From Mytilus edulis (Eukaryota), in contig NC_092354.1 of NCBI RefSeq assembly GCF_963676685.1, positions 8,494,001 through 8,558,000 on the forward strand: a stretch of 64,000 bases of DNA, given 5' to 3'. Positions 1,348 through 64,000 of the stretch are shown here, in pieces. Position 1 is the first letter of the stretch. The number at the start of each line of letters is the position of its first letter. The notes under the pieces are model-generated. The model had not been told where the DNA came from and did no database searches. It saw only the letters and a program-made list of their open reading frames with translations. Position numbers and translations under genes: made by a program.

Positions 1348-3195
1348 CTTCTCTTCTCTTCTCTTCTCTTCTATTTATTCGATAGGACACATTTCCACAC
1401 CGTCAAGTTTTAAATGTGTCTAATGTAATTTAATTTTGTTTTAATCTTAAATGAGGTCTTAAATTATTGATGTTATTGCATTTGTCTATCGGTACGGGTT
1501 CTCCTTAATTTGCACACAGCAATAGTAAAAATAAAAATAAGAATGGTTATGAATAAAGGAGGAATAAAGGTAAAACAATTAGACTGCCAAAATCATCCGT
1601 GAGCTAATATAAAAAAAAAAAGCCATTGAAAATTTGGCGGAAAATCATTCTCTCTATATTTTTCATACATATAACAAATTTTGCACCTTTTTTCTTTCAA
1701 AAACTTTAAAAAAAATAACATAAATTTTTAAATAGAACTTTGTGTAATAATATTATGAAAATATATAAAAGTAGGGGTTAGCGGGCAAAATATTTTGGGA
1801 AAGTACATAAAAAAAACCCAGAGGATTTCGAATATCTTGCAAAAATCCTAAAAACAACATGAATAAACATCATAAGACGCTTAAAAAACGTTTTACTCAC
1901 TTACAAACGATTTTTATGAATTAATGTATAAATACGAATAAGCATAGAGTATTACATGGTATTCATTTGTTCCGCTCTTTAACGAATGGCCAGTTTAGGT
2001 GCATGTATAATGAACCTATCTGGTTTTCCAGATTTTTGTATACTAGTATACATAATTGTTTATTTATGATTACGATAAAATAGCTTGTGTTTCTATCATA
2101 ATATGTTTACTGTCTCAGACGCGAGATGTGGTAATGTTGTTATAATTTTTACTACAAGCTTTAAGTTTTCATCGCAGATAAAGATCAGTAATTTTACATT
2201 TACAATGATTCGTTCGTTCACGAGAAACTATATTATCTCTGACATATATCAATACAATAACTAGTAATCGACTTGTCAATTGGTTTTACATTTTACATCA
2301 TCTGAAAGGTGTATGCACTACACCACTCCTTTATTCAGCTACACAAGAAAGATCCCATGTGGTTTGATTCGTCAACTGCCCGGAAACGTTTAATATTAAA
2401 TGATATCCGTGTTATAAAATGAATGAAAGCTAGTGTATATATGAGTGATTTACTATTTTCGACTTTAAAACTATTTCCATTAAACAACCATCTAGTATGA
2501 TGCATAATACATGTAATACTGTGCTAGCTATCAAACACATACAAAACAAAAGCGTAAGAAAACTAACTATTATTTACGGTATTAAACTTTTTTCAGAGAA
2601 ATTTTATCTATATAGTATCATGGTAAAAAAGCATAATTACTTTTGGGATGTTTTATAGTAATTAGTCTGATGTGTGACATGGCACAGTATTTAAAAAAAA
2701 TGAACAGAACGACTGATGAAGATATTACAATATGTAAAGAATAAATATATGACGACATGTTTTTTTTCATAACTATTACTTTTATGTATGATTAGTGTTA
2801 TAAAAATAGTTATTCTAAGTTAAATGTTGTTGGTTTTTTTTTTTTTTTTGCGTAAATTTAACATAACAAATCACTGCATTGTGTGCAAAGTGGCGCAAAA
2901 GCATTACAATAAAGCGGTCGTAAGGATTTACAGGCTACCCGTAGGTCTTTAACAATGAGAAAAAAATATCACATACTATACTCATGGTCGATTCAACAAA
3001 ACTTAATCTTCTTTTCTGTATTTTGAAAATATATATATTGAATAAAATTAAGGGATATCGAGATGAAAAATATGATCGAATGGAGCTATAGATTGTTTAA
3101 AAATAATTTAGATTTAAAAACTCGTCGGAAACGCTTTACTTCATTCAAAAAACAAATGCATACATTTTACGAACTGGACTCGACGATCTTTCAAA

Positions 3196-3953
3196 TCGTT
3201 CCCACAAGATAGCTATCTCGTTCCCTCAAGATACTATGTTGTTCCCACAAAATAAATATCTCGTTCCCTAAAGATGCTATGTCGTTCCCTCAAGATGTTA
3301 TGTTGTTCCCCCAAGATAGTCATCTTGTTCCCTCAAGATGATATGTCGTTCCCTCAAGATATCATGTCGTTCCCTCAAGATATTATGTCGTTCCCTCAAG
3401 AAACGATGTTTTCCCCTCAAGATGATATGTCGTTCCCTCAAGATGCTATGTTGTTCCCTCAAGATAGTTATCTCGTTCCCTCAACATAGCAATATCAATA
3501 CAATGTTAAAACTATGTTGAGGGAACAACATAGTATTTTGAGGAAACGACATAATAACTTGAGGGAACGACATAACATCTTGAGGGAACAACATAGTATC
3601 TTGAGGGAACGACATAGCACCTTGAGGAAACAACATAAAATCTTGAAGGAACGACATAGTATCTTGAGGGAACGACATAACATCTTGAGGGAACAACATA
3701 GTATCTTGAGGGAACGACGTAGCATCTTGAGGGAACAACATTACATCTTGAAGGAACGACAAAGTATCTTGAGGGAACGACATAATATCTTGAGGGAAGA
3801 ACATATTATCTTGAGGGAACGAGATAACTATCTTGTGGGGACGACATATTATCTTAAGGGAACGACATAGCATCTTGAGGGAACGAGATAGCTATCTTGT
3901 GGGAAGGACATATCATCTTGAAGGAACGACATAGTATCTTGAAGGAACAACAT
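3196..3953. repeat. Inverted (foldback) array of a 21-bp minisatellite
   Basis: Unit ~TGTCGTTCCCTCAAGATAnnA. About 14 units at 3196-3489, a 22-nt spacer at 3490-3511, then about 21 units in the opposite orientation at 3512-3953. Confidence 0.95.
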
Positions 3954-4898
3954 ATTTTTTTTTTCTTTCATAGACGCATTCTGCCACCGTAGTTTCATGA
4001 CCAAACTACAATCTGAATGGTTTTTTTAATTGATATACATATTTAGACTAACTTAAAGACCTTATTGCTAAACAATTGATAATTCAATAAAAGGCTATTG
4101 TTACAGTTTTCAGTCATGATTTACCTCAAAATTTAGTGAGTCAGGACTCTAAATTTTTGTTGAATAATAAATGTTTGAATACACTATATATATTTCTATC
4201 TTTATAAGCCTCTTTTCGTGCTTTTAGTTTGTTAAAGGAGAAATAGTGAACAAAATTAATAAGAACAAATAACACATTATACGTTTTTAGTAAGTTTAGG
4301 TAATTTTTTTTAACATGATTATACTTTTGTATACCCTCATGGTATATAATGCTACTTTGATAAAATATAATCTCCAAAGTCATGAAATAGTAAATACAGA
4401 AATGTTTTGATCCTTTTGTTAATTCGGTATTTTACAGATAAATGCATGGATTCAATTTTACAGTCAACATTACGCTTTCAAAATGACAGCAGAAATCACT
4501 GTTCCGTTGAAGCCTTTGCGATTTTTTTTTTATTTTCAAGCGTCATAAGTTTATTTGTCTCTATAGATTTGACCACGATGTTTATCTAGAAACAATATTT
4601 AACTTATTAAAACTGCAAGTATTCTGCATGTATGATTTATTTATCATGCCATAGTTTATTAATTTAGAAATATTTACATAGCCATGCAGTAGTGAACAGA
4701 CAATTTGTGTAGTAATCAATCCTCCTGAGAAAATAAAATGACCAACGATTGCATGATAGTTATTAAGTAATGTACGAGATAACTAATGACCGCAAAATCT
4801 GAAGTTTACCCCAACAAATTCCCATCTGCTAATTCCTCAATGTCTTGTTTCATGATTTACATGAACGATCAGATTCAGTATAATTATTTCCGGAGTTA

Positions 4899-5222
4899 CT
4901 AACATGACTAACATGTTTAACCCGCCACATTATTTATGTGTGTGCCTGTCCCAAGTCAGGAGCCTGTAATTCAGTGGTTGTCGTTTGTTTATGTGTTACA
5001 TAATTTTTTCGTTCATTTTTTGACATAAATAAGGCCGTTAGTTTTCTCGTTTGAATTGTTTTACATTGTCTTATCGGGGCCTTTTATAGCTGACTATACG
5101 GTATGGGCTTTGTTCATTGTTGAAGGCCGTACGGTGACCTATAGTTGTTAATGTTTGGGTCATTTTGGTATTTTGTGGATAGTTGTGTCATTGGTAATCA
5201 TACCACATCTTCTTTTTTTATA
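4899..5222 (+). mobile_element. Non-autonomous interspersed repeat containing the 3' half of the twister-like motif
   Basis: ACATGTTTAACCCGCC...GCCTGTCCCAAGTCAGGAGCCT is shared with the Penelope 3' ends at 25531-25580 and 63496-63544. Downstream parts recur inverted at ~10650-10745 and ~52270-52382. Confidence 0.75.
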
Positions 5223-8792: not shown

Positions 8793-9839
8793 TTAAGAAG
8801 TAGGCACTTCACATCGGTGTTAATATTTACACACCCAGCGGCAAGTTGTCATAAATCACGCACTATGAAGCTGGGGTTATAAAACGATTTTTTTTTGGCA
8901 CAGTAATTTTATGAAGATAATATGGTATTCAAAATTAAAACTATGATTAATCTAATTGATCGATGTTTGCAGCCGATATGTTTTATTACTAGATGCTTCG
9001 TTCACTCTGCATTGTCATAAAAGGAAAATTAACATAGTTTACTCAGACCTAATAGGCCTCAAAAGAATTTTCTACTTTTTGCGTGATACTTTTTTTTTAT
9101 TGCATAATTGATAGGCATGGGAGATACTTTTAATTAGTACAAATTGCGTTAAAAAAAGCAACAGCAACCTATATTTTTTTTTTACTAAAACATACTACAA
9201 TTTTCTTTAATACGGTTTCGTTCCTAAAATCAACATTCAAAGGCTCGAGAGAGAAAAAAGGCTACTATTGTACACGTTTATGACTGAGAAAATAAAATAG
9301 TTTGTCTTGTCTTGTCGTTTTATGGGAAAATCAATTGTTTGCCCCCCCCCCCCCCCCCCCCCCCCGCCCCGAAAATGAAATGGTTGCTGCCTAAGACATG
9401 TACTAAAAAAATGGCGATGGTCAGTTTATTTTGCTGTTGAGCATAGTTTACAAAGTCATTGCATATCGGTTTCCTTTAATAAAATAAAATAAATATATTT
9501 GGGCTTTTGAACAGGATTACTTTTGAAACGTCACAAAATACATTCTCATGTCCCAGGTTAGGGGAGGATTATGATCCCGCGAACATGATCACCCCCCCCC
9601 CCCCCCATTATGTATGTATGTGCCTGTTCCATGTCAGGAACCTGTAATTCAGTGGTTGTCGTTTTTTTATGGGTTACATATTTGTTTTTATGAATTATGA
9701 CATGTGAGAAGCAAAATGAATGTTTAACACGCATATTCATTAGAATATTTTTTGTATGGAGCGCGAGAGGGTCAAAAAGCGGAATTGAGTATTGTGTTAT
9801 TCAAAATCAATTTCTCGACCATGCTCTCAGGGCATCACT

Positions 9840-20381: not shown

Positions 20382-20814
20382 CCCCAAGGGTGACTGGGGT
20401 ATAGAAATATGGTCACTTGGTCTTCTCCCGACCGGCAGTAAAACGCTTGCTGAAGTGGGGCGTCCGTTTGGCTGTGCGGGATGTATCAAGTTCGCAGTCA
20501 CGCCCGTCAGAAGGGGACGTTAAATCCGATGCCTCGTGTAAAGAGAGTGCCACGCTCTTTGCACGGTAAGAACCCTTGCAACAACCCTTTGAGGGGTCCG
20601 TAGGTGGCCTGTTGCAAGGCAAAATTTCTGTCCCTATCCAATATACCCTCATTTTCCAGTGGCAGTCCAAATTTCCCCGACCATCATCCTAGATGGCCTT
20701 TATTACAACAACCTACCTATTGTATTTATTGTGAACTTGTTCTCGTCCTGAATATGCATGAAATATTTGCCACTGGACGTTAAGCAACCAACAATCAATC
20801 AATCAATCAATCAA
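20382..20814 (+). mobile_element. ~430-bp SINE (Nin/Deu-like core, (AATC)n tail), full length
   Basis: Starts CCCCAAGGGTGACTGGGG, core GGGGACGTTAAATCCGATGCCTCGTG...GCACG.TAAGAACCC, tail (CAAT)n. 13-bp TSD TCTAAGTGTTCTA at 20367-20379 and 20815-20827. Confidence 0.9.
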
Positions 20815-23211: not shown

Positions 23212-23947
23212 TTGATACTACAATAAATAGAGCCAACAATGTATATTGTAAACTTACCTTTGTCTTAGTATTGTCATCAGTACATTCTGTTGTTACTTTT
23301 CTTTTCTTCTTTTGTGATGGTGTCTTCTGTGGTGGTGTTTTTCCATTACTTTCATTGATCTTCTTTCTTTTAGGAGTTTCACTTTTTGGAATGGTCAAGT
23401 TATATTTTGTACCATTTAGATTTCCATTGGTTTGCTTGTATGAACTATAAGTTGTTTGAAGCCTTTTGAAATTACATCTAGCTCCTTTTTGTCCTTTTCA
23501 TCTGTTAAAAACATAAAATTTGGGTGAATACTGGTTGTCGAATTCCCATATGGAATTTACTGACCCCATATATACCCATTACGTCACTGGCACCCTATGT
23601 AATTTAGACTAGTGACCTATAAAAATGAGCAAGTCTTCAATACAGGTAGCATTAACATGATTAAGAAACTACTTCCTATGATCCTACAAAAACAGATGCC
23701 AAAAATGACAACTTGTTAGATTTAAATATGTTTTATGAATTTATTTCAATTTATCATCACTTTTTTCGTCTGTTGAAACCTTTAAGATTTTTTCTCAGTA
23801 CTGTTTTTGTTTTTCCAAAGGCACGTAACACCACTACTAACCATGTCTGAAATAATCCCCGCCTCCTTATTACCTTATATGGAATATAAAGAGACGTAAC
23901 TTTACTACTAACCGTATATGAAATAAGCCCCGTCACCCAACTAACCT

Positions 23948-25182
23948 TCAAGCCATTGTTCAACTACTAAATTGTCTATTCTTCTTACCAGCACACTTGG
24001 TACAATTAAAAACCTTATAATAAATTGTTCAAATAAGGCCTTCGAAAATAGTGGAATAAATTACTTCTGGAGTGTCAAGAACTCGTTGGAAGTACTTGAT
24101 AAATTGCATGCTTATATTGGTGATTTTGAATCTATTCAAAGTTTTGATTTTTCTACCCTGTATCCACATTGCCTCACATTCTCATTAAGAAAAAATTCAC
24201 ACACCTAATTAAATGGGCATTCAAAAAATCAGAATGTGAATATATATGTTCAAACTCTTTTAGGTCATTTTTTAGTAGCAATAAACAAAAAAACTATGTT
24301 AATTGGACATGCTTTGATACTATATATGCCCTTGAATTTTTACTAGATAACATTTTTGTTCGCTTTGGGGATTCCGTATATCGTCAGATTATCGGAATTC
24401 CAATGGGGACTAACTGTGCACCACTTATTGCGGACCTCTTTTTGTATTGTTATGAGTTACAATTTATGACAAAAATAAGCAAAGACCCATCAAAACAACA
24501 TCTGATAAACAAATTTAATAATACTTTTAGATATTTGGATGATATTTTGGCTCTCAATAATGACGACTTCAGTATGTATATTAATGAAATTTATCCGGCT
24601 GAACTTACTTTAAATAAAGCTAATACTAACAATGACCACTGCCCTTTCCTCGATCTTGATATCTATATCACTAACGGAAAGCTGAATACTAAAATTTATG
24701 ATAAAAGGGATGATTTTTCATTTCCTATCGTTAATTATCCGTTTTTAGATGGTGACGTTCCCTTGTCACCATCTTACGGTGTTTATATTTCTCAACTTGT
24801 ACGATTCGCTCGTGTATGTAACAATGTTTTAGATTTTAACGAGAGAAATTTATGTATTACTGAAAAATTATTACACCAGGGTTTTCGATATCACAAACTA
24901 GTCAAAACATTTACTAAATTTTATCATCGGTATAAAGACATCATTCGTAAATATAGCTCAACATGCAGACTTCTTATACGTTCAGGTATTTCACATCCAA
25001 TTTTTTATGGAAATATTCTTTATAAAGCACAAAGGTGTCAGTATTCACCTCAGAAACTTAAAAAACCTTTGAATAGACTTATTAAGAAGGGATATAATTA
25101 CGATACTGTTGTCAAGTCATTAAAGATTGCATATTTTGGCGTTAATATTGAGTCACTGATAAGGTCTTTGCGTCGGAACTAA
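23948..25182 (+). pseudogene. Penelope-like reverse transcriptase (frameshift near 24163), with no C-terminal endonuclease
   Basis: SFDFSTLY(T)TLPH, QIIGIPMGTNCAPLIADLFL, FRYLDD, FLDLDI, YDKRDDFSFPIVNYPFLDGDVP..SYGVYISQLVRFARVC. ORFs 23972-24208 and 24169-25182 join via a 1-nt deletion. Ends TAA. Confidence 0.92.
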
Positions 25183-25232
25183 ACACATTTATTCTAAAAA
25201 CAGTTGTTGGCATGACACGGGTTATGTTCTTC

Positions 25233-25299
25233 TCATATATGTTATGATGGTATGATACTAAACCCCTAACGGGAAGGATTGTGCCTGATGTACATATGA
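25233..25299 (+). promoter_or_regulatory. Type II SECIS element (predicted)
   Basis: AUGAU core (25244-25248), helix II GGUAUGAUaCU/AGgAUUGUGCC, unpaired AAA (25260-25262), mini-stem CCC-cuaac-GGG, 3' UGAU (25286-25289), helix I UCAUAU/AUAUGA. Lies ~50 nt after the stop codon. Confidence 0.85.
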
Positions 25300-25494
25300 T
25301 GAAATCATAATCTTTCAGTCAGTTTAATTGAAGTCTGGAGCTGGCATGTCAGTTAACTGCTAGTAGTCTGTTGTTATTTATGTATTATTGTCATTTTGTT
25401 TATTTTCTTTGGTTACATCTTCTGACATCAGACTCGGACTTCTCTTGAACTGAATTTTAATGTGCGTATTGTTATGCGTTTACTTTTCTACATT

Positions 25495-25585
25495 GGTTAG
25501 AGGTATAGGGGGAGGGTTGAGATCTCACAAACATGTTTAACCCCGCCGCATTTTTGCGCCTGTCCCAAGTCAGGAGCCTCTGGCC
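25495..25585 (+). ncRNA. Twister ribozyme, P5-type permutation (predicted)
   Basis: P5 GGUUAGAGGU/GCCUCUGGCC; P2 GGGG/CCCC; GAGGG; U|AA; GCC; P3 GCA-uuuu-UGC; G; P4 CCUG-UCCCAAGU-CAGG; A. The order and conserved nucleotides match the twister consensus, but the P1 region is atypical. Confidence 0.8.
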
Positions 25586-26578
25586 TTTGTTAGTCTTGTA
25601 TAATTTTAATTTTAGTTTCTTGTGTACAATTTGGAAATTAGTATGGCGTTCATTATCACTGAACTAGTATATATTTGTTTAGGGGCCAGTTGAAGGACGC
25701 CTCCGGGTGCGGGAATTTCTCGCTACATTGAAGACCTGTTGGTGACCTTCTGCTGTTGTTTTTTATTTGGTCGGGTTGTTGTCTCTTTGACACATTCCCC
25801 ATTTCCATTCTCAATTTTATTATATTAAATATACACTATTTCCACGAGGACGATTTTAACCAATCATGTTCCTAGATATGTATAGGAGGTAAGATACTGT
25901 ACATGTTATGTCACACTTTTCATTGAAAACACAAACACAGTACAAATCATATCACTTTTGGGAACCTGATCAGAACCTTATTATGTTTGATCTTATGATT
26001 GCAGCTGGTTGTCGTTTGTCCATGTGGTTCACAAGTTTTTAATGTAGATCGAATCCGTCATTAAATGATTCTCCTTAATATTCAAATAGCTATGCAAATT
26101 ATCTAGTTCTATATTCTATCGTGACAAATTAACGGTAGCTAATAAAATATATGTTGCACGAAGCTACATAAAATATTCTCGGGTACATCTACCATACTTT
26201 GATATGTAATAACCAAACTTTACGAGGAGAACGAAGTCATACAATAGAAATTTTGCTAACTTTATCATTTACATGTGAAAATATTAATAATATTACAAAG
26301 AAGTTGATTTACATTAAATAGGTAATATGTTGTGTCCACAATAGATGAAAACAATAATATACAGGTAATGTAAATTCGGGACACACAATATCATACGTCT
26401 GCAATTTTTAAGTTTCCGTGCAAATCCTCCTGGCCAATACAAAATATGAATTGACCGCGAAATCAAAATGATTAACAAATACGTAATTTTAACAAAGAAT
26501 ATTCATGAACTAAATATAAAAAGTAAAGTGAAGATGATTTCGATTAAAATAATTATGTTCCTTTATCAAAATTCAAGT

Positions 26579-27007
26579 CCCCCAAAGGTGACTGGGGAAT
26601 AGAAATATGGTCACTTGGTCTTCTCCCGACCGGCAGTAAAACGCTTGCCGTAGTGGGGCGTCCGTTTGGCTGTGCGGGATGTATCAAGTTCGCAGTCACG
26701 TCCGCTCAGAAGGGGACGTTAAATCCGATGCCTCGTGTAGAGAGAGTGCCACGCTCTTTGCACGTTAAGAATCCTTGCAAAAACTCTTTGAGGGGTCCGT
26801 AGGTGGCCTGTTGCAAGGCAAAATTTCTATCCCTATCCAATATATCCTCATTTTCCAGTGGCAGTCAAAATTTCCCCGACCATCATCCCAAATGGCCTCT
26901 ATTGTATCAACCTACCTATTGTATTTATTGTGAACTTGTTCTCGTCCTGAATATGCATGAAATATTTGCCACTGGACGTTTAGCAACCAACAATCAATCA
27001 ACAATCA
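26579..27007 (+). mobile_element. 430-bp SINE, full length
   Basis: Same family. Near-perfect 13-bp TSD ATCAAAAT(T/G)CAAG at 26565-26577 and 27008-27020. Confidence 0.9.
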
Positions 27008-27224
27008 ATCAAAATGCAAGAGTTAAACGTTTAGAATAAATACAATTCATTTGAAATACTTTAAAGATATTTTTATAATTATTTAATAGGCGTACAAATG
27101 ACACTACTACACTTGCATTTCCTATCATGATTTTTTTTGATAGAGGGTTGTTGCTCACAAGGAAACTAAATTTAAGAGTACCAAATGGTGAAGTTGAAAT
27201 TATCCCTTCGTAAATTTTATGGAC

Positions 27225-29728: not shown

Positions 29729-29876
29729 GGAGGTATATGGGGAGGGTGTAGATCGTGCGAGGGCTGTATATAGCCATGCAATGTCGTTAAAATCGTCCAT
29801 CATATCATCAAACATGTTCAACACCGCCGTATTATTGCGTCTGTCCAAAGTAAGGAGCCTCTTGCCGTTACAAGTT
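29729..29876 (+). ncRNA. Degenerate copy of the twister-like motif
   Basis: GGAGGTATATGGGGAGGG ... AACATGTTCAACACCGCC...GCGTCTGTCCAAAGTAAGGAGCCTCT, with several core substitutions. Confidence 0.55.
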
Positions 29877-33200: not shown

Positions 33201-33944
33201 TTCCGTCTTAGTTTAATATTTTTGCTATATAATTTGCTACATTTCTCTCGGGAACGACCATTTAACTTCTCTAAGATCAACAACAATGAGTGAAATACAA
33301 CCATTTCTCATAAAAACAAATCAAATGTTAATCGGTTTTTTTTACGAATTTTTGATGGTGTTACAACTTTAAAGTTAAATAGGCAGTGATACGTTTGATT
33401 GTACTTAATTTGATGTATATAGATTGCTTTAAGCACGGTTTCATCTGTGAGGGTCGTAAGAAGTTAACACTATCTGTGTGTGTGTTGAGAGATTGACAAT
33501 TAATATGAAAGATAATATTCATAGTGTTAAAACTATATCTGTATAAAATGAGAAAAATAAAAATGAACTAGCTGTTTGTCTTATCTACTTTAAATATATA
33601 TATAATTATTTTAAGGACATATATATGATGTTGTTCAAACATTAAAACAAAATGGTTGAATGCACAGTTAACTGTCAAAAATTGTGTCCAATTATGAATA
33701 GGAAAAGTCACAATTACTTTTATTTGTTGATTTGTTGAAATAAATTTATGTATTAAATGTATTATAATATAATTATCTTTTAGTTGAATGACGACATTAT
33801 GATAGTTGTAAAACTCAACGATGTAATTAAATTATTATTTATATTCTATATATACATGTATGTGTACTTTTCTTTTTACTTTTTGATGTTCAATAATATT
33901 GAGTGCTGGTGCTCATTTCATTCTCGACGTGAGGAAATAACGTA

Positions 33945-35866
33945 AAAAATGTAGAAAAAAAGGTATAAAATTTATAGACAAATGTAGAAAAAATATAATT
34001 CAACCAATGAAAGGTCTGTTTTAACTGTCAATATAATGATCTATAGAATATGGTCGGTTTCTAAAAGTATCAAAAAAGTTATCAAATTTATAGGCAAATG
34101 TAAAAAATGTTTTATTAAACCAATGAAAGTTCTGTTTTTACTGTCAATATAAATCTCTATAGAATATGGTCGATTTCTTAAACTATCAAAAAAGGTATAA
34201 AATTTATAGACAAATGTTGAAAAAATATAATTAAACCAATGAAAGGTCTGTTTTAACTGTCAATATAAGTATCTATAGAATATGGTCGATTTCTGAAATT
34301 GTCAAAAAAGGTATAAAGTCTTAGCCAAACGTAGAAAAAATATTATTAAACTAATGACAGGTCTGTTTTTACTGTCAATATAATTATCTATTGAATATGG
34401 TCGATTTCTTAAATTATCAAAAAGTTATCAAATGTATAGGCAAATGTACAAAAAAATATTCTTAATCCAATGACAGGTCTTTTTTACTGTCAATGTAATT
34501 ATCTATTGAATATGGTCGATTTCTTAAATTATCAAAAAGTTATCAAATGTATAGGCAAATGTACAAAAAAATATTCTTAAACCAATGACCGGTCTGTTTT
34601 TACTGTCAATATAATTATCTATTGAATATGGTCGATTTCTTAAATTATCAAAAAGTTATCAAATGTATAGGCAAATGTACAAAAAAATATTCTTAAACCA
34701 ATGACAGGTCTGTTTTTACTGTCAATATAATTATCTATTGAATATAGTCGATTTCTTAAATTATCAAAAAAGTTATCAAATTTTTAGGCAAATGTACAAA
34801 AAAATATTATTTAAGCAATAACAGGTCTGTTTTTTTGTTAATATGATTCTCTATAGAATATGGTCGATTTCTAAAATTATAAAAAAGGTATCAAATTTTA
34901 GGCAAACGTAGAAAAAATATTATTAAACTAATGACAGGTCTGTTTTTACTGTCAATATAATTATCTATTGAATATGGTCGATTTCTTAAATTATCAAAAA
35001 AGGTTATCAAATGTTTAGGCAAATGTAGAAAAAGATATTATTAAACCAATGACAGGTCTGTTTTTACTGTCAATATAATTCTCTATAGAATATGGTCGAT
35101 TTCTAAGATTATAAAAAAAGGTATAAAATTTTAGGCAAATGTAGAAATAATATTAAACCATTGACAAGTCTGTTTTTACTGTCAATGTAATTTTCTATAG
35201 AATATGGTCGATTTCTAAAATTATCAAAAAAGATATAAAATGTATAGGCAAATGTAGAAAAATATATTATTAAACCAATGACAGGTCTGTTTTTACTGTC
35301 AATATAATTATCTATTGAATATGGTCGATTTCTTAAATTATCAAAAAAGATATAAAATTTTTGGCAAATGTAGAAAACATATAAATAAACCAATGACAGG
35401 TCTGTTTTTACTGTCAATATAATTATCTATTGAATATGGTCGATTTCTTAAATTATCAAAAACGTTATCAAATTTTTAGGCAAATGTACAAAATATTATT
35501 AAACCAATGACAGGTCTGTTTTTAATGTCAACATCATTCTCTATAGAATATGGACGAATTCTTAAACCATCAAAAAAGTATAAAATTTATAGACAAATGT
35601 AGTAAAAACATAATTAAACCAATGAATGGTCTGTTTTAACTGTCAATATAATAATCTATAGAATACGATCGGTTTCTAAAACTATCAAAAAAGTTATCAA
35701 ATTTATAGGCGAATGTAGAAAAAAGATATTATTAAACCAATGACAGGTCTGTTTTTACTGTGAATATAATTAGCTATAGAATATGGTCGATTTGTAAAAT
35801 TATAAAAAGAAGTTATCAAATTGATAGGCAAATGTAGAAATAATATTAAACCATTGACAAGTCTTT
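33945..35866. repeat. Tandem satellite, ~116-bp unit, about 16-17 copies
   Basis: Unit ~AAACCAATGACAGGTCTGTTTTTACTGTCAATATAATTATCTATTGAATATGGTCGATTTCTTAAATTATCAAAAAGTTATCAAATGTATAGGCAAATGTA..., recurring at ~34001, 34118, 34234 ... 35735, 35849. Confidence 0.97.
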
Positions 35867-47887: not shown

Positions 47888-48310
47888 CCCCAAGGGTGAC
47901 TGGGGTCTAGAAATATGGTCACTTGGTCTTCTCCCGACCGGCAGTAAAACGCTTGCTGATGTGGGGCGTCCGTTTGGCTGTGCGGGATGTATCAAGTTTG
48001 CAGTCACGTCCGGTCAGAATGGGACGTTAAATCCGATGCCTCGTGTAAAGAGAGTGCCACGCTCTTTGCACGTTAAGAACCCTTGCAACAACTCTTTGAG
48101 GGGTCCGTAGGTGGCCTGTTGCAAGGCAAAATGTCTGTCCCTATCCAATATACCCTCATTTTCCAGTGGCAGTCCAAATTTCCCCGACCATCATCCAAGA
48201 TGGCCTCTATTATACCAACCTACCTATTGTATTTATTGTGAACTTGTTCTCGTCCTGAATATGCATGAAATATTTGCCACTGGACGTTAAGCAACCAACT
48301 ATCAACTATC
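47888..48310 (+). mobile_element. 430-bp SINE, full length
   Basis: 15-bp TSD TATTATGTACAAATT at 47871-47885 and 48311-48325. Confidence 0.92.
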
Positions 48311-48686
48311 TATTATGTACAAATTTATATATATACATTAGCAGTAATTTCATACATTGTTCAATAAAGAGACACACCCATTCTAAATCACTAACTCTAT
48401 TCAACTCTCCCGCATCTCAACGTTCATAAACTTTTATCTTAAAAAAGGCCTTTCCTACTTTCATTACTTTCTCTCTTTAAATCGTCATTCAATTCTAGAT
48501 CACATAAGTACAAAAAAATGTATAAGGACAGAAGATAAACAAACAGAAACATAAATTATACAGCTTCTAATTAGACATGATTACAATTAAAACATGTTAA
48601 AACACAGCTGCACCATACATTAAGATTAACGGTCAATCAGAGAGTCTGCTAAAGTTCATGAAAACAACAACTCTACAAATACTTAA

Positions 48687-52592: not shown

Positions 52593-52658
52593 TACATAGA
52601 CATATCATACTGTATAAAATCAACAAAAGACAAGTTTCACAATGTCCATTTTCAAGAA

Positions 52659-53072
52659 CCCCAAGGGTGACTGGGGTGTAGAAATATGGTCACTTGGTCT
52701 TCTCCCGACCGGCAGTAAAACGCTTGCCGAAGTGGGGCGTCCGTTTGGCTTTGCGGGATGTATCAAGTTCGCAGTCACGTCCGGTCAGAAGGGGGACGTT
52801 AAAAAAAAGAGCCACGCTCTTTGCACGTGAAGAACCCTTGCAACAACTCTTTGAGGGATCCGTAGGTGGCCTGTTGCAAGGCAAAATGTCTGTCCCTATC
52901 CAATATACCCTCATTTTCCAGTGGCAGTCTAAATTTCCCCGACCATCATCACAGATGGCCTCTATTGTATCAACCTACCTATTGTATTTATTGTGAACTT
53001 GTTCTCGTCCTGAATATGCATGACATATTTGCATCTGGACGTTAAGCAACCAACAATCCATCAATTAATCAA
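52659..53072 (+). mobile_element. 430-bp SINE, near full length
   Basis: 13-bp TSD TCC(A/G)TTTTCAAGA at 52645-52657 and 53073-53085. Confidence 0.9.
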
Positions 53073-53677
53073 TCCGTTTTCAAGACACGTTTAAAAATAA
53101 ATCTCTCTTATCAGTTGATAACGAAGCTCAGGGTGTATCGATTATTTCCGGCTTATGTAACTGACAATGACATTGTATGAAACAAAACGCAAATCTTTTC
53201 TCTCGATCAATTAGATGAGATTTGCAAAATTAAAAGAAATTTTGAGAGTAAAAGTGCATCGGGAACTAAACAAATTCTTGCAAGGTGTAAGCACCAGATC
53301 CCGTGGTAGACGATCGTGAAATAACAGCTGATGAGAGGTCAAACAGGGTCACCGATATTGATATTGAAGACAGTTTCAATCCCCAAATTAGTTTGAATTC
53401 TGTCAAGGAAATACGATTTAATGAACCAAATGTAACGGCAAAAGGACGCAGTGGGAAACAGACCAGCGGAATTTTCCCCCGTGTATACCAATACCTGGTT
53501 TAAAGAACAAAAAAATACGGAGACTTAGGCAGAGTTCGGATGGTTTTTTTGGGGAACTTTTGAGTCGGGTCCATGACATACTATTCTAAATTATGAAGCG
53601 CTTTCCATTTGAACGCATTTTTCGATCTCGAGTAACTCTCTGACATGGCCGACTATATAAATGTTTTATTTACTTAA

Positions 53678-59879: not shown

Positions 59880-60777
59880 CCATTTTTAACTGTTGACGAT
59901 CTCAATAGTGAGGAAGTTACATTTTATACAAGTTTACACAATAAGCCGACATTTTATTTATTGTATGAACATATAATGTCAAATATAAAAATTGTTGAGC
60001 CACAGACTGGAGGCAGACCTCAAAAACTAAGAGGTGTGGAAGAATTATTTATGGCTTTAATGCGGCTGCGTCTGGGTTTACATACTCAGGACTTGGCACG
60101 TCGTTTTAATATTTATGTTTCTACTTGTAGTAAAATATTTAACACATGGATTGATTTAATGTATGAACATTAACATTTTCTTGTTGCCTGGCCTGAAACT
60201 GTCAAATGTAATATGCCTGGCAGTTTTAAAAGGAGGTATCCAAATTGTGTAATTGTAGATTGATTGATTGATTGTTGGTTGCTTAACGTCCAGTGGCAAA
60301 TATTTCATGCATATTCAGGACGAGAACAAGTTCACAATAAATACAATAGGTAGGTTGTTGTAATAGAGGCCATCTAGGATGATGGTCGGGGAAATTTGGA
60401 CTGCCACTGGAAAATGAGGGTATATTGGATAGGGACAGAAATTTTGCCTTGCAACAGGCCACCTACGGACCCCTCAAAGAGTTGTTGCAAGGGTTCTTAA
60501 CGTGCAATGAGCGTGGCACTCTCTTTACACGAGGCATCGGATTTAACGTCCCCTTCTGACGGACGTGACTGCGAACTTGATACATCCCGCACAGCCAAAC
60601 GGACGCCCCACTTCAGCAAGCGTTTTACTGCCGGTCGGGAGAAGACCAAGTGACCATATTTCTATACCCCAGTCACCCTTGGGGTGTGTAATTGTAGATT
60701 GTACTGCAATATTCACAGGAACGCAACAGTTATTATCTAATAAAGGAAGAATGTACTCGACTACAAGTCACATATGA
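59880..60777 (+). pseudogene. ISL2EU/Harbinger-type transposase remnant split by a SINE
   Basis: FYTSL...GRPQKLRGVEELFMALMRLRLGL..DLARRFNI..STCSKIFNTWI...WP...MPGSFKRRYPNC|VIVDCT (HTH_Tnp_4 plus the start of DDE_Tnp_4). Confidence 0.85.
60263..60684 (-). mobile_element. 430-bp SINE, full length, young
   Basis: Perfect 17-bp TSD TGTGTAATTGTAGATTG at 60246-60262 and 60685-60701. Confidence 0.95.
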
Positions 60778-62581: not shown

Positions 62582-62971
62582 ACTGACTTATTGATTGTTG
62601 GTTGCTTTCAAACTCAACTGCGTAGTCATTATCTGGACCTTGATTTTCCGCCACTGTTAGAGCGGAGCTTGGGATTGCTGAATTGTGTATTTCAACTACA
62701 ACTTCTAGGTTTGTTAAATCTTTTCTGGGGAAGCAATTGGCGTCACATTTATGGTCAGTTGAAGAACTGGACTAGAGTTGTTTGGAACACTTTCAAAACT
62801 CATTCAAAACGGTGTTCATAATTTTTTGATCGGCCATTGTTGTTCCTGTCAAATGCTTCTAAAGAGCTAAAAGTTTCTTTGGGAATGGCTAATGTATTCC
62901 AGTGGTGAATTCCTGTTGATTTTAACCCCGCTACTATGGTAACTCTTGTAAAGGCCTTCTCATATGCCTGT

Positions 62972-63130
62972 CGCACATTTTCTTTAAATTTTGAAACTGA
63001 TATAACTTGAAAAACAAACAGTATTATTTATTTACTCACATGAAACAAACCGGGGTTTGGTATTCAGTACGTAGGAGAAACTGGACGATATTTATCTAAA
63101 CGCACTCAAGAACATCTGTATGGTTTTAAT
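62972..63130 (+). pseudogene. GIY-YIG endonuclease fragment with two in-frame UGA (putative selenocysteine) codons
   Basis: RTFSLNFETDIT-U-KTNSIIYLLT-U-NKPGFGIQYVGETGRYLSKRTQEHLY, with TGA at 63008-63010 and 63041-63043. Confidence 0.85.
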
Positions 63131-63197
63131 CTTTGCATCGGAACTAAACACATTTATTCTAAAAACAGTTGTTGGCATGACACGGTTTATGTTCTTC

Positions 63198-63264
63198 TCA
63201 TATATGTTATGATGGTATGTTACTAAACCCCTAACGGGAAGGATTGTGCCTGATGTTCATATGA
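63198..63264 (+). promoter_or_regulatory. SECIS element, second copy
   Basis: Same fold as 25233-25299 with one extra helix II mismatch; core and AAA intact. Confidence 0.8.
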
Positions 63265-63459
63265 TGAAATCATAATCTTTTAGTCAGTTTAATTGAAGTC
63301 TGGAGCTGGTATGTCAGTTAACTGCTAGTAGTCTGTTTTTATTTATGTATTATTGTCATTTTGTTTATTTTCTTTGGTTACATCTTCTGACATCAGACTC
63401 GGACTTCTCTTGAACTGAATTTTAATGTGCGTATTGTTATGTGTTTACTTTTCTACATT

Positions 63460-63550
63460 GGTTAGAGTTATAGGGGGAGGGTTGAGATCTCACAAACATG
63501 TTTAACCCCGCCGCATTTTTGCGCCTGTCCCAAGTCAGGAGCCTCTGGCC
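63460..63550 (+). ncRNA. Twister ribozyme (P5-type), second copy
   Basis: Core identical to 25495-25585 with one P5 mismatch; predicted cut between 63503 and 63504. Confidence 0.78.
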
Positions 63551-64000
63551 TTTGTTAGTCTTGTATTATTTTAATTTTAGTTTCTTGTGTACAATTTGGA
63601 AATTAGTATGGCGTTCATTATCACTGGACTAGTATATATTTGTTTAGGGGCCAGCTGAAGGACGCCTCCGGGTGCGGGAATTTCTCGCTACATTGAAGAC
63701 CTGTTGGTGACCCTCTGCTGTTGTTTTTTATTTGGTCGGGTTGTTGTCTCTTTGACACATTCCCCATTTTCATTCTCAATTTTACTACTTGATTAAGGGA
63801 CTGATTCCTTGTTGACTGCTTCTAGCAGTCCCAATGTCTCGTATGAGTGATGTGAATTCCAAATTAAAACCAGTGTTTTAGAAACACGTTTTTAAACCAA
63901 TCCTCTCCCAGCTGATCATCCATCCATGCTTCTGGATCGAAACGCCACTTGGCGTATTCTGGTCCTTTATGCATATTGTATGATCTTTGGTAATGCGGTG

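What the first reader, a model, noticed from the sequence alone, without database searches (positions are those of the whole stretch)
62972..63785. Integrated system: Sec-recoded endonuclease + SECIS + twister ribozyme in one retroelement family
Seen: this 0.8-kb copy joins the UGA-containing EN fragment, at a junction near 63130, to a 3' end carrying SECIS, twister and a third structured module; the copy at 23946 supplies the RT. Inference: the full element is EN(Sec)-RT-SECIS-twister. Because the UGAs would lie upstream of the RT, RT synthesis would depend on selenium and the Sec machinery, while the ribozyme sets RNA ends. That would make a selenium-gated, self-processing retrotransposon. 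The combination with a twister appears undescribed to me.
Basis: partly seen in the sequence, partly recalled or inferred. Interest (0 to 1): 0.92.

Follow-up and report, generated by a model that had tools for sequence, protein, structure and literature searches.

The report
Selenoprotein retroelement carrying a twister ribozyme
This is a broken copy of a 'Naiad' Penelope-like jumping gene whose family needs four UGA stops read as selenocysteine (a kind already described in clams) and, apparently undescribed, carries a conserved twister self-cleaving RNA motif where other Penelope-like elements carry hammerhead ribozymes.

Summary
Window 62970-63787 is a dead, one-off copy. It is 5'-truncated, and a unique 2.6-kb internal deletion joins an endonuclease fragment with two in-frame TGAs to the element's last 658 nt.

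Natural full-length copies (about 3.96 kb) in the same genome link this endonuclease, the RT of the copy at 23946 and this 3' end. They form one frame of about 1,000 codons interrupted only by four TGAs. All four align with cysteine codons in relatives.

A SECIS lies 52 nt after the stop. It scores below Rfam's cut-off but shows covariation. This part is already known as Naiad selenoprotein elements (Craig et al. 2021).

The twister is also real as a structure. Rfam scores it at only 23 bits. In 28 related loci from marine metagenomes, P2, P3, P4, P5 and both pseudoknots covary and the catalytic core is invariant. It occurs in Cys-type relatives too, so it belongs to the clade, not to the Sec system. 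The P1 hairpin is replaced by two perfect palindromes, which hints at action as a dimer.

Self-cleavage, Sec insertion and selenium gating are untested. No paper found links twister to Penelope-like elements. Other first readers of this scan noted the same cassette elsewhere in this genome; those notes are unchecked.

The parts
62970..63129 (+). 5'-truncated fragment of the N-terminal GIY-YIG endonuclease region of a Naiad-type Penelope-like element. It equals positions 1501-1660 of the reference copy L028.
   Evidence: 39 other genomic copies are 99% identical over exactly this stretch. The motif ..IIYLLT[U]NKPG.GIQYVGETGR..R..EH is present. The EN fold model of an aligned relative matches I-TevI.
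63008..63010 (+). In-frame TGA, Sec site 2 of the family (the cysteine before the GIY strand).
   Evidence: TGA in 20 of 20 sampled copies. It aligns with Cys in 8 of 8 Cys-type relatives. The same site is TGT/TGC in L086, L087, L098 and L105.
63041..63043 (+). In-frame TGA, Sec site 3 (the cysteine just after the GIY strand, before GIQYVG).
   Evidence: TGA in 20 of 20 sampled copies. It aligns with Cys in 8 of 8 Cys-type relatives. The site is TGT in L100 and L105.
63129..63130 (+). Deletion junction: L028 positions 1661-4274 (about 2.6 kb) are missing. The two sides are out of frame with each other.
   Evidence: Comparison with a full-length copy. The 21-nt junction word occurs once in the 1.37-Gb genome.
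63130..63147 (+). Last codons of the EN-RT frame, with its TAA stop at 63145-63147.
   Evidence: Identical to the end of the ORF of the copy at 24169-25182.
63199..63263 (+). SECIS element: AUGA quartet, apical AAA and 3' GA, lying 52 nt after the stop.
   Evidence: Rfam SECIS_1 at 30 bits, E 0.0017. The same model matches right after the stop in 9 of 17 relatives. The alignment has invariant AUGA/AAA/GA, and 14 of 20 pairs show compensatory changes.
63460..63550 (+). Type-P5 twister-class ribozyme motif. P5 is 63460-67/63543-50. P2 is 63473-76/63506-09. The conserved G-A is at 63477-78. Pseudoknot T2 pairs GGG 63479-81 with CCC 63529-31. Pseudoknot T1 pairs GC 63510-11 with GU 63534-35. P3 is 63513-15/63520-22. 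P4 is 63524-27/63536-39. The predicted cleavage is between U63503 and A63504.
   Evidence: Rfam Twister-P5 at 23.1 bits. My own models R1 and R2 give 29 hits of 52-91 bits in relatives, all on the + strand. Covariation includes both pseudoknots. The core is invariant. P5 covaries.
63483..63503 (+). Two self-complementary tracts in place of the P1 hairpin: Pal1 63483-63492 (UGAGAUCUCA) and Pal2 63494-63503 (AAACAUGUUU, ending at the scissile U).
   Evidence: A perfect palindrome sits at the Pal1 position in all 29 distinct relatives, in at least 21 different sequences. Palindromic nt total 458, against 77 +/- 23.5 in shuffles.
63645..63705 (+). Conserved 3'-tail block: hairpin 63674-63688 followed by an invariant UUGAAG (63693-63698).
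   Evidence: Conserved across relatives of 67-94% protein identity. RNAalifold finds modest covariation: 7 of 14 pairs. The single-sequence fold is not exceptional, z -1.1.
63787..63787 (+). 3' end of the element.
   Evidence: The same end point is seen in the copy at 25822 and in about 60 sampled copies.
23946..25822 (+). Second, 5'-truncated copy of the same family: RT C-terminal half, stop, SECIS, twister (25490-25591) and tail.

Best explanation
The stretch is a dead copy of a young, high-copy Naiad-type Penelope-like retroelement (PLE). It is 5'-truncated and internally deleted.

SHOWN
- An intact family member is about 3.96 kb.
- It encodes one protein of about 1,000 residues. The order is Zn-fingers, an N-terminal GIY-YIG endonuclease, a KR-rich/CxC/GxKY linker, a DKA motif and a telomerase-like RT.
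- The frame holds four UGA codons at conserved cysteine positions.
- The 3' region holds, in order, a SECIS, a type-P5 twister-class motif and a conserved tail block.

INFERRED
- The UGAs are decoded as selenocysteine through the SECIS and the host's tRNA-Sec. Endonuclease and RT synthesis would then depend on the Sec machinery.
- The twister self-cleaves between U63503 and A63504.
- Its role parallels the hammerheads in the pseudo-LTRs of other PLEs. In tandem or pseudo-LTR arrays, two twisters flank the ORF and could release a unit-length RNA from longer transcripts.
- The two palindromes that replace P1 suggest that two ribozyme copies pair and act as a dimer.

The twister belongs to this Naiad clade whether the element uses Sec or Cys. 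It is not mechanistically tied to Sec recoding.
For: FULL-LENGTH LINKAGE
- In 20 fetched copies the EN fragment lies 1,395 nt upstream of the sequence that starts at window 23946. Partial upstream tails form pseudo-LTRs.
- Five of 20 copies keep a frame of about 950-1,008 codons with no TAA or TAG and four TGAs at fixed positions.

SELENOCYSTEINE
- Sites 1-3 align with Cys in 7 to 8 of 8 Cys-type relatives.
- Site 4 lies 8 aa after DKA. It is TGA in 34 related loci and TGT/TGC in 22.
- The SECIS is supported.
- The host has five tRNA-Sec genes at 77-80 bits against a cut-off of 47.
- This matches the Naiad selenoproteins of PMC8557442.

PROTEIN FOLDS
- The RT model has telomerase RTs as its top 16 matches.
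- The EN model matches I-TevI with TM 0.73, followed by other GIY-YIG nucleases.

TWISTER
- 25 of 28 relatives with at least 49% identity and enough 3' sequence carry it, always on the sense strand.
- 91.9% of cells are paired, against about 40% in slid controls.
- 12 of 16 pairs show double changes. These include T1 and T2, which were not part of the search model. No shuffle of 500 reached the observed values.
- G-A, U at -2, A+2 and most of the L4 core are invariant or nearly so.
- The P5 closing stem is far more stable with its own partner: -12.7 against -4.5 kcal/mol for cross pairs.
- Two twisters flank the ORF in L080 and L094 and in tandem genomic copies.
- P1 is known to be dispensable (PMC11662667).
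Against: - Both RNA motifs score below Rfam's curated cut-offs: SECIS 30 against 35 bits, twister 23.1 against 37.6.
- There is no canonical P1 hairpin.
- No RNA data could be obtained, so neither cleavage nor Sec insertion is shown.
- Genomic 5' ends do not pile up at the cleavage site. One of about 45 truncated copies starts at A63504. The word spanning the site has 5,694 copies, against 6,337 for the word just 3' of it.
- Only about 3 of 14 near-full-length copies sampled have an intact upstream twister.
- Cleavage would detach the last 284 nt, which genomic copies retain.
- Pfam and PDB sequence searches did not recognise either protein domain.
Confidence: 0.8

Rival explanations
1. The twister-like motif is a conserved structured RNA that keeps the twister fold but no longer cleaves. 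It might serve, for example, as an RT-binding or packaging element.
For: No P1 hairpin is present and the Rfam score is below threshold. In a large sub-clade one T2 position is U.U and P2 carries a fixed mismatch. There is no genomic footprint of cleavage. PLE hammerheads themselves cleave poorly in vitro (PMC4209133).
Against: The positions that are invariant are the catalytic and core ones (G-A, N^AA, CCAAG), while all helices drift and compensate. A mere binding site would not need both pseudoknots and the scissile UAA. P1 and helix imperfections are tolerated by active twisters, of which 94% of natural candidates cleave (PMC11662667).
Confidence: 0.2
2. The in-frame TGAs are ordinary stops. 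Either the copies are pseudogenes, or the protein is made by SECIS-independent read-through or from separate short ORFs, with no selenocysteine.
For: Sec insertion has not been measured for any Naiad. The SECIS scores are under Rfam's cut-off.
Against: Only TGA interrupts about 1,000 codons, never TAA or TAG. The four sites are fixed in copies that are 97-99% alike. In relatives they are TGA or TGT/TGC and nothing else, at conserved Cys positions. A covarying SECIS sits right after the stop in the Sec-type lineages. The host has tRNA-Sec.
Confidence: 0.07
3. The 0.8-kb EN-fragment-plus-tail arrangement is itself a functional, amplified non-autonomous element.
For: It retains the whole 3' cassette of SECIS, twister and tail.
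Against: The junction word is unique in the genome. None of 39 other EN copies shares the junction. The two sides are out of frame.
Confidence: 0.02
4. The twister is active as a monomer, and the two palindromes serve another purpose. Options include RNA dimerisation for packaging, pairing of the two ends of a tandem transcript, or a role in the cDNA.
For: P1 is dispensable for twister catalysis (PMC11662667). The two palindromes are not complementary to each other, so a domain-swapped P1 is not the obvious geometry.
Against: The tracts sit exactly where the two P1 strands of a type-P5 twister would be, and Pal2 ends at the scissile nucleotide. PLE hammerheads show the analogous palindromic helix III, read there as a dimer signal (PMC4209133).
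Confidence: 0.35

Closest known systems
Naiad selenoprotein PLEs (Naiad_Mmer of Mercenaria, Naiad_Scon of Sinonovacula, and the spider Naiads; Craig et al. 2021, PMC8557442)
   Same: N-terminal GIY-YIG EN followed by RT in one ORF. CxC, GxKF/Y and DKA motifs. UGA at the Cys near the GIY-YIG motif and at the Cys 8 aa after DKA. SECIS just after the stop. Pseudo-LTR and tandem insertions. High copy number. No hammerhead.
   Different: This family has four UGAs, including the second Cys of the CX2-5CxxC finger, a position reported there for a spider family. Its SECIS lies 52 nt after the stop. That paper searched only for hammerheads and reports no twister.
Minimal hammerhead ribozymes in the pseudo-LTRs of Penelope/Poseidon, Neptune and other PLEs (Cervera and de la Pena 2014, PMC4209133)
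   Same: A small self-cleaving ribozyme motif in the repeated 3'/pseudo-LTR part of a PLE, so that two copies flank the ORF. A helix replaced by palindromic sequence, read as a sign of dimeric action. Massive copy numbers.
   Different: A different ribozyme class (twister, double pseudoknot). Here there are two separate palindromes of 6-14 nt rather than a 2-4 nt palindromic loop.
[quoted passage not shown] 2021, PMC8501958)
   Same: Twister-class ribozymes embedded in a retrotransposon, proposed to process the element's transcript.
   Different: A different retroelement class (LINE against PLE). Different position: at the 5' end, with target-site-duplication (TSD) sequence contributing to P1, against the 3' region and pseudo-LTR. 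No permuted P5 form, no palindromes and no Sec.
Rfam Twister-P5 (RF02684), the type-P5 twister of Roth et al. 2014
   Same: Permutation opened at P5. P2, P4, the L4 CCCAAG loop, the GAGGG strand and the UAA cleavage site all align over the full model.
   Different: Scores 23.1 bits against a cut-off of 37.6. The P1 hairpin does not align, and a P3 hairpin is inserted.
Animal non-LTR retrozymes, hammerhead-bearing non-autonomous derivatives of PLE pseudo-LTRs (PMC7229834; bioRxiv 10.64898/2026.07.22.740005)
   Same: They link PLE repeats, tandem ribozymes and a possible circular or rolling-circle RNA route.
   Different: They carry hammerheads, not twisters. No circular RNA evidence was obtained here.

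Membership tests
Naiad clade of Penelope-like elements | GIY-YIG endonuclease N-terminal to the RT in a single ORF | tested here: met
   The EN motif sits about 1.3 kb upstream of the RT in one frame. The EN fold model matches I-TevI, TM 0.73. Pfam itself gave no hit.
Naiad clade of Penelope-like elements | Diagnostic linker motifs: KR-rich tract, CxC, GxKF/Y, and DKA in place of DKG | tested here: met
   RKKRSHGRR.., CNC, GPKY and DKA are found in that order.
Naiad clade of Penelope-like elements | Telomerase-like (PLE-type) reverse transcriptase | tested here: met
   The fold search returns TERT structures as its top 16 hits, E down to 1.5e-4. TM scores are low (about 0.3) and mean pLDDT is 68. 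A YLDD motif is present. No phylogeny with named PLE clades was made.
Naiad clade of Penelope-like elements | Pseudo-LTR, partial-tandem insertion structure | tested here: met
   Upstream 5'-truncated tails abut full-length copies, and L021 holds full tandem copies. Related loci show the same (L072, L080, L094, L101).
Naiad clade of Penelope-like elements | No canonical hammerhead ribozyme | tested here: met
   No hammerhead match at E<=10 in the finding or in 31 related loci.
Eukaryotic selenoprotein gene | In-frame UGA at positions held by Cys in homologues | tested here: met
   All four sites meet this.
Eukaryotic selenoprotein gene | SECIS element in the 3' UTR (AUGA quartet, apical AA, GA, two helices) | tested here: met
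   The core motifs are present and invariant and the helices covary. Rfam scores are 26.6-32.3 bits, under the 35-bit cut-off. SECISearch3 was not available.
Eukaryotic selenoprotein gene | Host Sec-decoding machinery | tested here: met
   Five tRNA-Sec genes lie above the cut-off. SBP2, eEFSec and the other factors were not searched.
Eukaryotic selenoprotein gene | Selenocysteine actually incorporated | not testable with these tools
   This needs a reporter assay, 75Se labelling or proteomics.
Twister ribozyme (type P5) | Conserved core nucleotides: the G-A before T2, N^AA at the cleavage site, the L4 loop and the GC of T1 | tested here: met
   Invariant or nearly so in 29 sequences. They align with Rfam RF02684 over the full model.
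Twister ribozyme (type P5) | P2 and P4 helices and the two pseudoknots T1 and T2 | tested here: met
   Compensatory changes occur in every helix. T1 and T2 were not in the search model. P2 carries a recurrent mismatch in one sub-clade.
Twister ribozyme (type P5) | Permutation closed by a P5 stem | tested here: met
   The flanks pair in every instance with lineage-specific sequences.
Twister ribozyme (type P5) | P1 helix next to the cleavage site | tested here: not met
   There is no hairpin; two palindromes take its place. P1 is reported dispensable for catalysis (PMC11662667), so I do not treat it as disqualifying.
Twister ribozyme (type P5) | Rfam gathering score | tested here: not met
   23.1 bits against 37.6. 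A relative scores 24.1 against 67.2 on twister-P1.
Twister ribozyme (type P5) | Site-specific self-cleavage | not testable with these tools
Genomic 5' ends give no support.

The most novel reading that the evidence does not exclude
Naiad Penelope-like elements, reported to lack ribozymes, have recruited a twister in place of the hammerhead of other PLEs. In this reading the twister is an obligate dimer. The two palindromes that replace P1 pair two ribozyme copies, either the two copies flanking the ORF in a pseudo-LTR or tandem transcript or copies on two RNAs. Cleavage would then occur only on multimeric transcripts and release a unit-length RNA, possibly circularised, that carries the ORF and the SECIS. 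In the Sec lineages, translation of that RNA would additionally be gated by selenium supply.
Probability: 0.3. Interest if true: 0.85.

Novelty: new variant of a known kind. Interest (0 to 1): 0.72.

Why it matters
- Convergent ribozyme use. The hammerhead has been treated as a hallmark of PLEs, and Naiads as the exception without one. A conserved twister in the equivalent position would mean PLEs need some self-cleaving ribozyme, whichever class. That is independent recruitment of two ribozyme classes for one job, and a strong hint that RNA self-processing is essential to this poorly understood mode of retrotransposition.
- Source of animal twisters. This genome holds about 20,000 copies of the core, so such elements could account for many 'orphan' twisters in invertebrate genomes. 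Database thresholds miss them because of the P3 insert and the missing P1.
- A testable dimer hypothesis. The palindromic P1 substitutes offer a concrete test of ribozyme dimerisation.
- Spread of Sec in retroelements. The survey suggests Sec-encoding Naiads are widespread among marine invertebrates: 34 of 57 assessable metagenomic loci have TGA at site 4. Close relatives differ in Cys or Sec at site 4 (L074, at 80% identity, has TGT), consistent with repeated switching. That makes them a good system for studying how selenoproteins arise.

Tried and rejected
BLOCKED STEPS
Comparative DNA came from the search for related loci on metagenomes instead.

SEARCHES THAT GAVE NOTHING USEFUL
4. Whole-window Rfam searches found no twister. 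A genome-wide RF02684 search was uninformative, because E-values are scaled to 1.37 Gb.
5. Pfam and PDB sequence searches of the EN and RT pieces gave nothing. Fold searches were needed instead.
6. Relatives at 38-45% identity without a twister hit, together with three closer loci that also lack one, showed no other known ribozyme.
7. No supplementary tables of PMC11662667 are held. I could not check whether its 'bivalve' twisters are these sequences.

TESTS WITH A NEGATIVE OR REJECTING RESULT
8. Cleavage footprint: I looked for a pile-up of 5'-truncated copies at A63504. The result was negative: 1 of about 45 copies, with a small cluster of 3 at 63483-63486. The word-count step across the site is at most 10%.
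9. A monomeric P1 hairpin was rejected. The minimum-free-energy fold pairs GGG with CCC(C) in a competing hairpin, and its z-score is only -1.3.
10. An amplified non-autonomous 0.8-kb family was rejected.

LEFT OUT ON PURPOSE
The pieces between the TGAs were searched separately, and X was used at the TGAs only inside a script.
Full report
WHAT IS AT THE COORDINATES

Window 62970-63787 (+) consists of two pieces. The first, 62970-63129, reads in frame as ..IT[TGA]KTNSIIYLLT[TGA]NKPGFGIQYVGETGRYLSKRTQEH, the start of a GIY-YIG nuclease with two in-frame TGAs at 63008 and 63041. The second, 63130-63787, is 97.7% identical to 25165-25822. That is the 3' end of a second, 5'-truncated copy at 23946-25822, whose 337-codon ORF (YLDD motif) stops at TAA 25180-25182.

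Comparison with full-length copies shows the finding is 5'-truncated. It also lacks about 2.6 kb between the two pieces, and the two sides are out of frame. The 21-nt word across the junction occurs once in the 1.37-Gb genome. This copy is therefore a one-off wreck, not a working mini-element. It lies inside a remnant of a pogo/Tigger-like DDE transposase gene on the other strand.

THE FULL ELEMENT

The EN fragment has hundreds of near-identical copies. In 20 copies fetched with flanks, it always lies 1,395 nt upstream of the sequence that begins at window 23946. Many copies are preceded by a 5'-truncated tail of another copy, which is the pseudo-LTR arrangement typical of Penelope-like elements. 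One unit is about 3.96 kb.

Five of the 20 copies keep a frame of about 950-1,008 codons that runs to the RT's TAA stop. That frame has no TAA or TAG and exactly four TGAs at fixed positions. Sites 2 and 3 are TGA in 20 of 20 copies. Site 4 is TGA in every copy whose frame reaches it. I used one natural copy (L028) purely as a coordinate reference.

THE PROTEIN

The pieces between the TGAs carry, in order:
- C-x4-[U1]-x2-C
- [U2]-x10-[U3]-NKPGCGIQYVGETGR..R..EH
- a KR-rich tract
- CNC
- GPKY
- DKA followed by seven residues and [U4]
- an RT with YLDD

These are the diagnostic motifs of the Naiad clade, and its Sec positions include the Cys 8 aa after DKA (PMC8557442).

Pfam and PDB sequence searches recognised nothing, so I turned to folds. 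A model of the C-terminal 480 residues has telomerase RTs as its 16 best PDB matches. A model of the EN region of an aligned Cys-type relative best matches the I-TevI catalytic domain (TM 0.73), followed by other GIY-YIG nucleases.

SELENOCYSTEINE

I collected 80 related loci from marine metagenomes, at 36-99% identity to the C-terminal piece.
- Site 4 is TGA in 34 loci, TGT/TGC in 22 and another codon in one.
- Sites 2 and 3 are likewise TGA or TGT/TGC.
- Sites 1-3 align with Cys in 7 to 8 of 8 Cys-type relatives.
- Rfam SECIS_1 matches 63199-63263 at 30 bits, and matches right after the stop codon in 9 of 17 relatives at 26.6-32.3 bits. All are just under the 35-bit cut-off.
- In their alignment the AUGA, the apical AAA and the 3' GA are invariant, and 14 of 20 pairs show compensatory changes.
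- The host has five tRNA-Sec genes well above the cut-off.

The Sec reading is therefore well founded. It is also already published for clam and spider Naiads. Dependence of EN and RT synthesis on selenium follows from established Sec biology, because all four UGAs precede the RT core. It remains untested.

THE TWISTER

Whole-window Rfam searches show nothing. A 111-nt search gives Twister-P5 at 63473-63539 with 23.1 bits against a cut-off of 37.6. The full model aligns except for P1, and there is a 12-nt insertion.

Read as a type-P5 twister, the parts are:
- P5: 63460-67 with 63543-50
- P2: GGGG with CCCC
- the strand G-A-GGG
- U63503^A63504-A at the cleavage site
- GC of pseudoknot T1
- a P3 hairpin
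- P4: CCUG with CAGG
- loop UCCCAAGU

The decisive evidence is comparative. A covariance model built from eight instances, then rebuilt from 26, finds 29 matches of 52-91 bits in 28 related loci. All are on the sense strand. All lie 3' of the RT, or in an upstream pseudo-LTR.

On that alignment:
- 91.9% of pair cells are standard pairs, against 32-43% when partners are slid.
- 12 of 16 pairs show changes on both sides.
- The covariation score is 0.42, against 0.08 or less for slid controls.
- No shuffle of 500 reached the observed values.
- The two pseudoknots, which the model cannot represent, also compensate. T2 shows GGG:CCC changing to AGG:CCU, AGA:UCU, GGA:UCC and GGU:ACC. T1 shows GC:GC, AC:GU and GC:GU.

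The core positions are invariant or nearly so. The P5 closing stem is lineage-specific: -12.7 kcal/mol with its own partner against -4.5 for cross pairs.

Among relatives with at least 49% identity and at least 450 nt after the stop, 25 of 28 carry the motif. It occurs in Sec-type lineages and in lineages with Cys at site 4 (L074, L112, L133, L117, L119, L126, L130). It is therefore a property of the clade, not of the Sec system. Relatives at 38-45% identity without a hit, together with three closer loci that also lack one, showed no other known ribozyme.

A PECULIARITY: PALINDROMES IN PLACE OF P1

All 29 distinct sequences have a perfect palindrome of 6-10 nt beginning 2-4 nt after the T2 strand. 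Here it is UGAGAUCUCA, and there are at least 21 different versions.

Most also have a second palindrome that ends at, or next to, the scissile nucleotide. Here it is AAACAUGUUU; elsewhere it is AAACUAGUUU, AAACCGGUUU or AAACGUUU.

Palindromic nucleotides total 458, against 77 +/- 23.5 in shuffles, with a maximum of 170 in 2,000 shuffles. A hairpin does not require a self-complementary loop, so pairing in trans is the simplest reading. This echoes the palindromic helix III of PLE hammerheads, which was interpreted as dimeric action (PMC4209133). P1 is dispensable for twister catalysis (PMC11662667).

WHAT IS NOT SHOWN

No RNA data were obtainable. The genome shows no footprint of cleavage:
- Of about 45 5'-truncated copies, one begins exactly at A63504 and three begin at 63483-63486.
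- The 22-mer spanning the site has 5,694 exact copies, against 6,337 for the 22-mer just 3' of it.
- Only about 3 of 14 near-full-length copies have an intact upstream twister.
- Cleavage would separate the ORF-plus-SECIS RNA from the last 284 nt, which every insertion retains.

A tandem or circular RNA template would reconcile these facts, but that is conjecture.

ABUNDANCE

The P4/L4 core word occurs 19,901 times in the genome, and the reversed control pattern occurs 0 times. That is about three times the count for this family's own word. Decayed tails of other twister-bearing families lie in the window at 4877-4976, 9545-9654 and 29730-29872.

THE THIRD MODULE

Region 63645-63705 is conserved across relatives. 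It contains a small hairpin (63674-63688) with some compensatory change, followed by an invariant UUGAAG. Its single-sequence fold is unremarkable. Function is unknown. An RT recognition site is a reasonable guess.

NOVELTY

- The EN(Sec)-RT-SECIS part is known (PMC8557442). This is a new family, probably in a mytilid mussel. I infer that from the 1.37-Gb genome with 14 chromosome-sized contigs; it is not verified.
- That paper states that Naiads lack hammerhead motifs, and it did not look for other ribozymes.
- Full-text searches found no paper containing both 'twister' and 'Naiad'. None of the 17 papers with 'twister' and 'Penelope-like' describes such an association.
- Twisters are known in bivalves (PMC11662667) and at the 5' end of a schistosome LINE (PMC8501958).
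- I therefore rate the twister-Naiad link, and the palindromic P1 substitute, as a new variant of known kinds.
- Other first readers of this scan noted the same cassette on other pieces of this genome. Those notes are unchecked and did not alter my reading.

Noticed in passing
window 4877-4976, 9545-9654, 29730-29872: Decayed twister-bearing tails of other repeat families. The copy at 9545 keeps the GGGGAGGA strand and a P5 like that of locus L133. The copy at 4877 has lost the 5' half. The copy at 29730 has a 62-nt P1 region and a mutated L4.
   Followed up: partly
G000, whole genome: The twister P4/L4 core CCTGTCCCAAGYCAGGA occurs 19,901 times, and its reversed control 0 times. This family's own 22-mer occurs 6,337 times. 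Several families must therefore carry the motif.
   Followed up: partly
window 63864-63998 (-) and 62800-62976 (-): The 0.8-kb copy is inserted in a remnant of a pogo/Tigger-like transposase gene. Pfam DDE_1 scores 21.7 bits, E 1.6e-4, just under the cut-off of 22.
   Followed up: partly
loci L071-L150 (marine metagenome contigs): Sec-type Naiads look widespread: 34 of 57 assessable loci have TGA at the Cys 8 aa after DKA. L074, at 80% protein identity to this family, has TGT there yet keeps a SECIS-like element. That suggests recent Sec/Cys switching.
   Followed up: partly
G000 C10:14401393-14442259 and contig C945: More than 40 tRNA-like genes in a tandem array with 895-bp spacing score 45.9 bits against the tRNA-Sec model, just under its cut-off of 47. 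They are probably another long-arm tRNA type. The five clear tRNA-Sec genes are on C7 (four within 0.6 Mb) and C1.
   Followed up: no
window 3159-3982: A 21-bp minisatellite in two blocks of opposite orientation, forming a 250-nt inverted repeat that is 87% complementary.
   Followed up: no
window 33875-35840: A satellite of about 17 tandem units of 115-116 bp.
   Followed up: no
window 20382-20808, 26580-27011, 47888-48319, 52651-53074, 60258-60684 (inverted): A repeat of about 430 bp is present five or more times in the window at 92-99% identity, in both orientations. It may be a MITE-like or SINE-like element.
   Followed up: no
window 63483-63486, and loci L054, L065, L066: Three independent 5'-truncated copies begin within 4 nt of each other, right after the GAGGG strand and at the start of the first palindrome. 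This may be a pause or template-switch site for the RT.
   Followed up: partly
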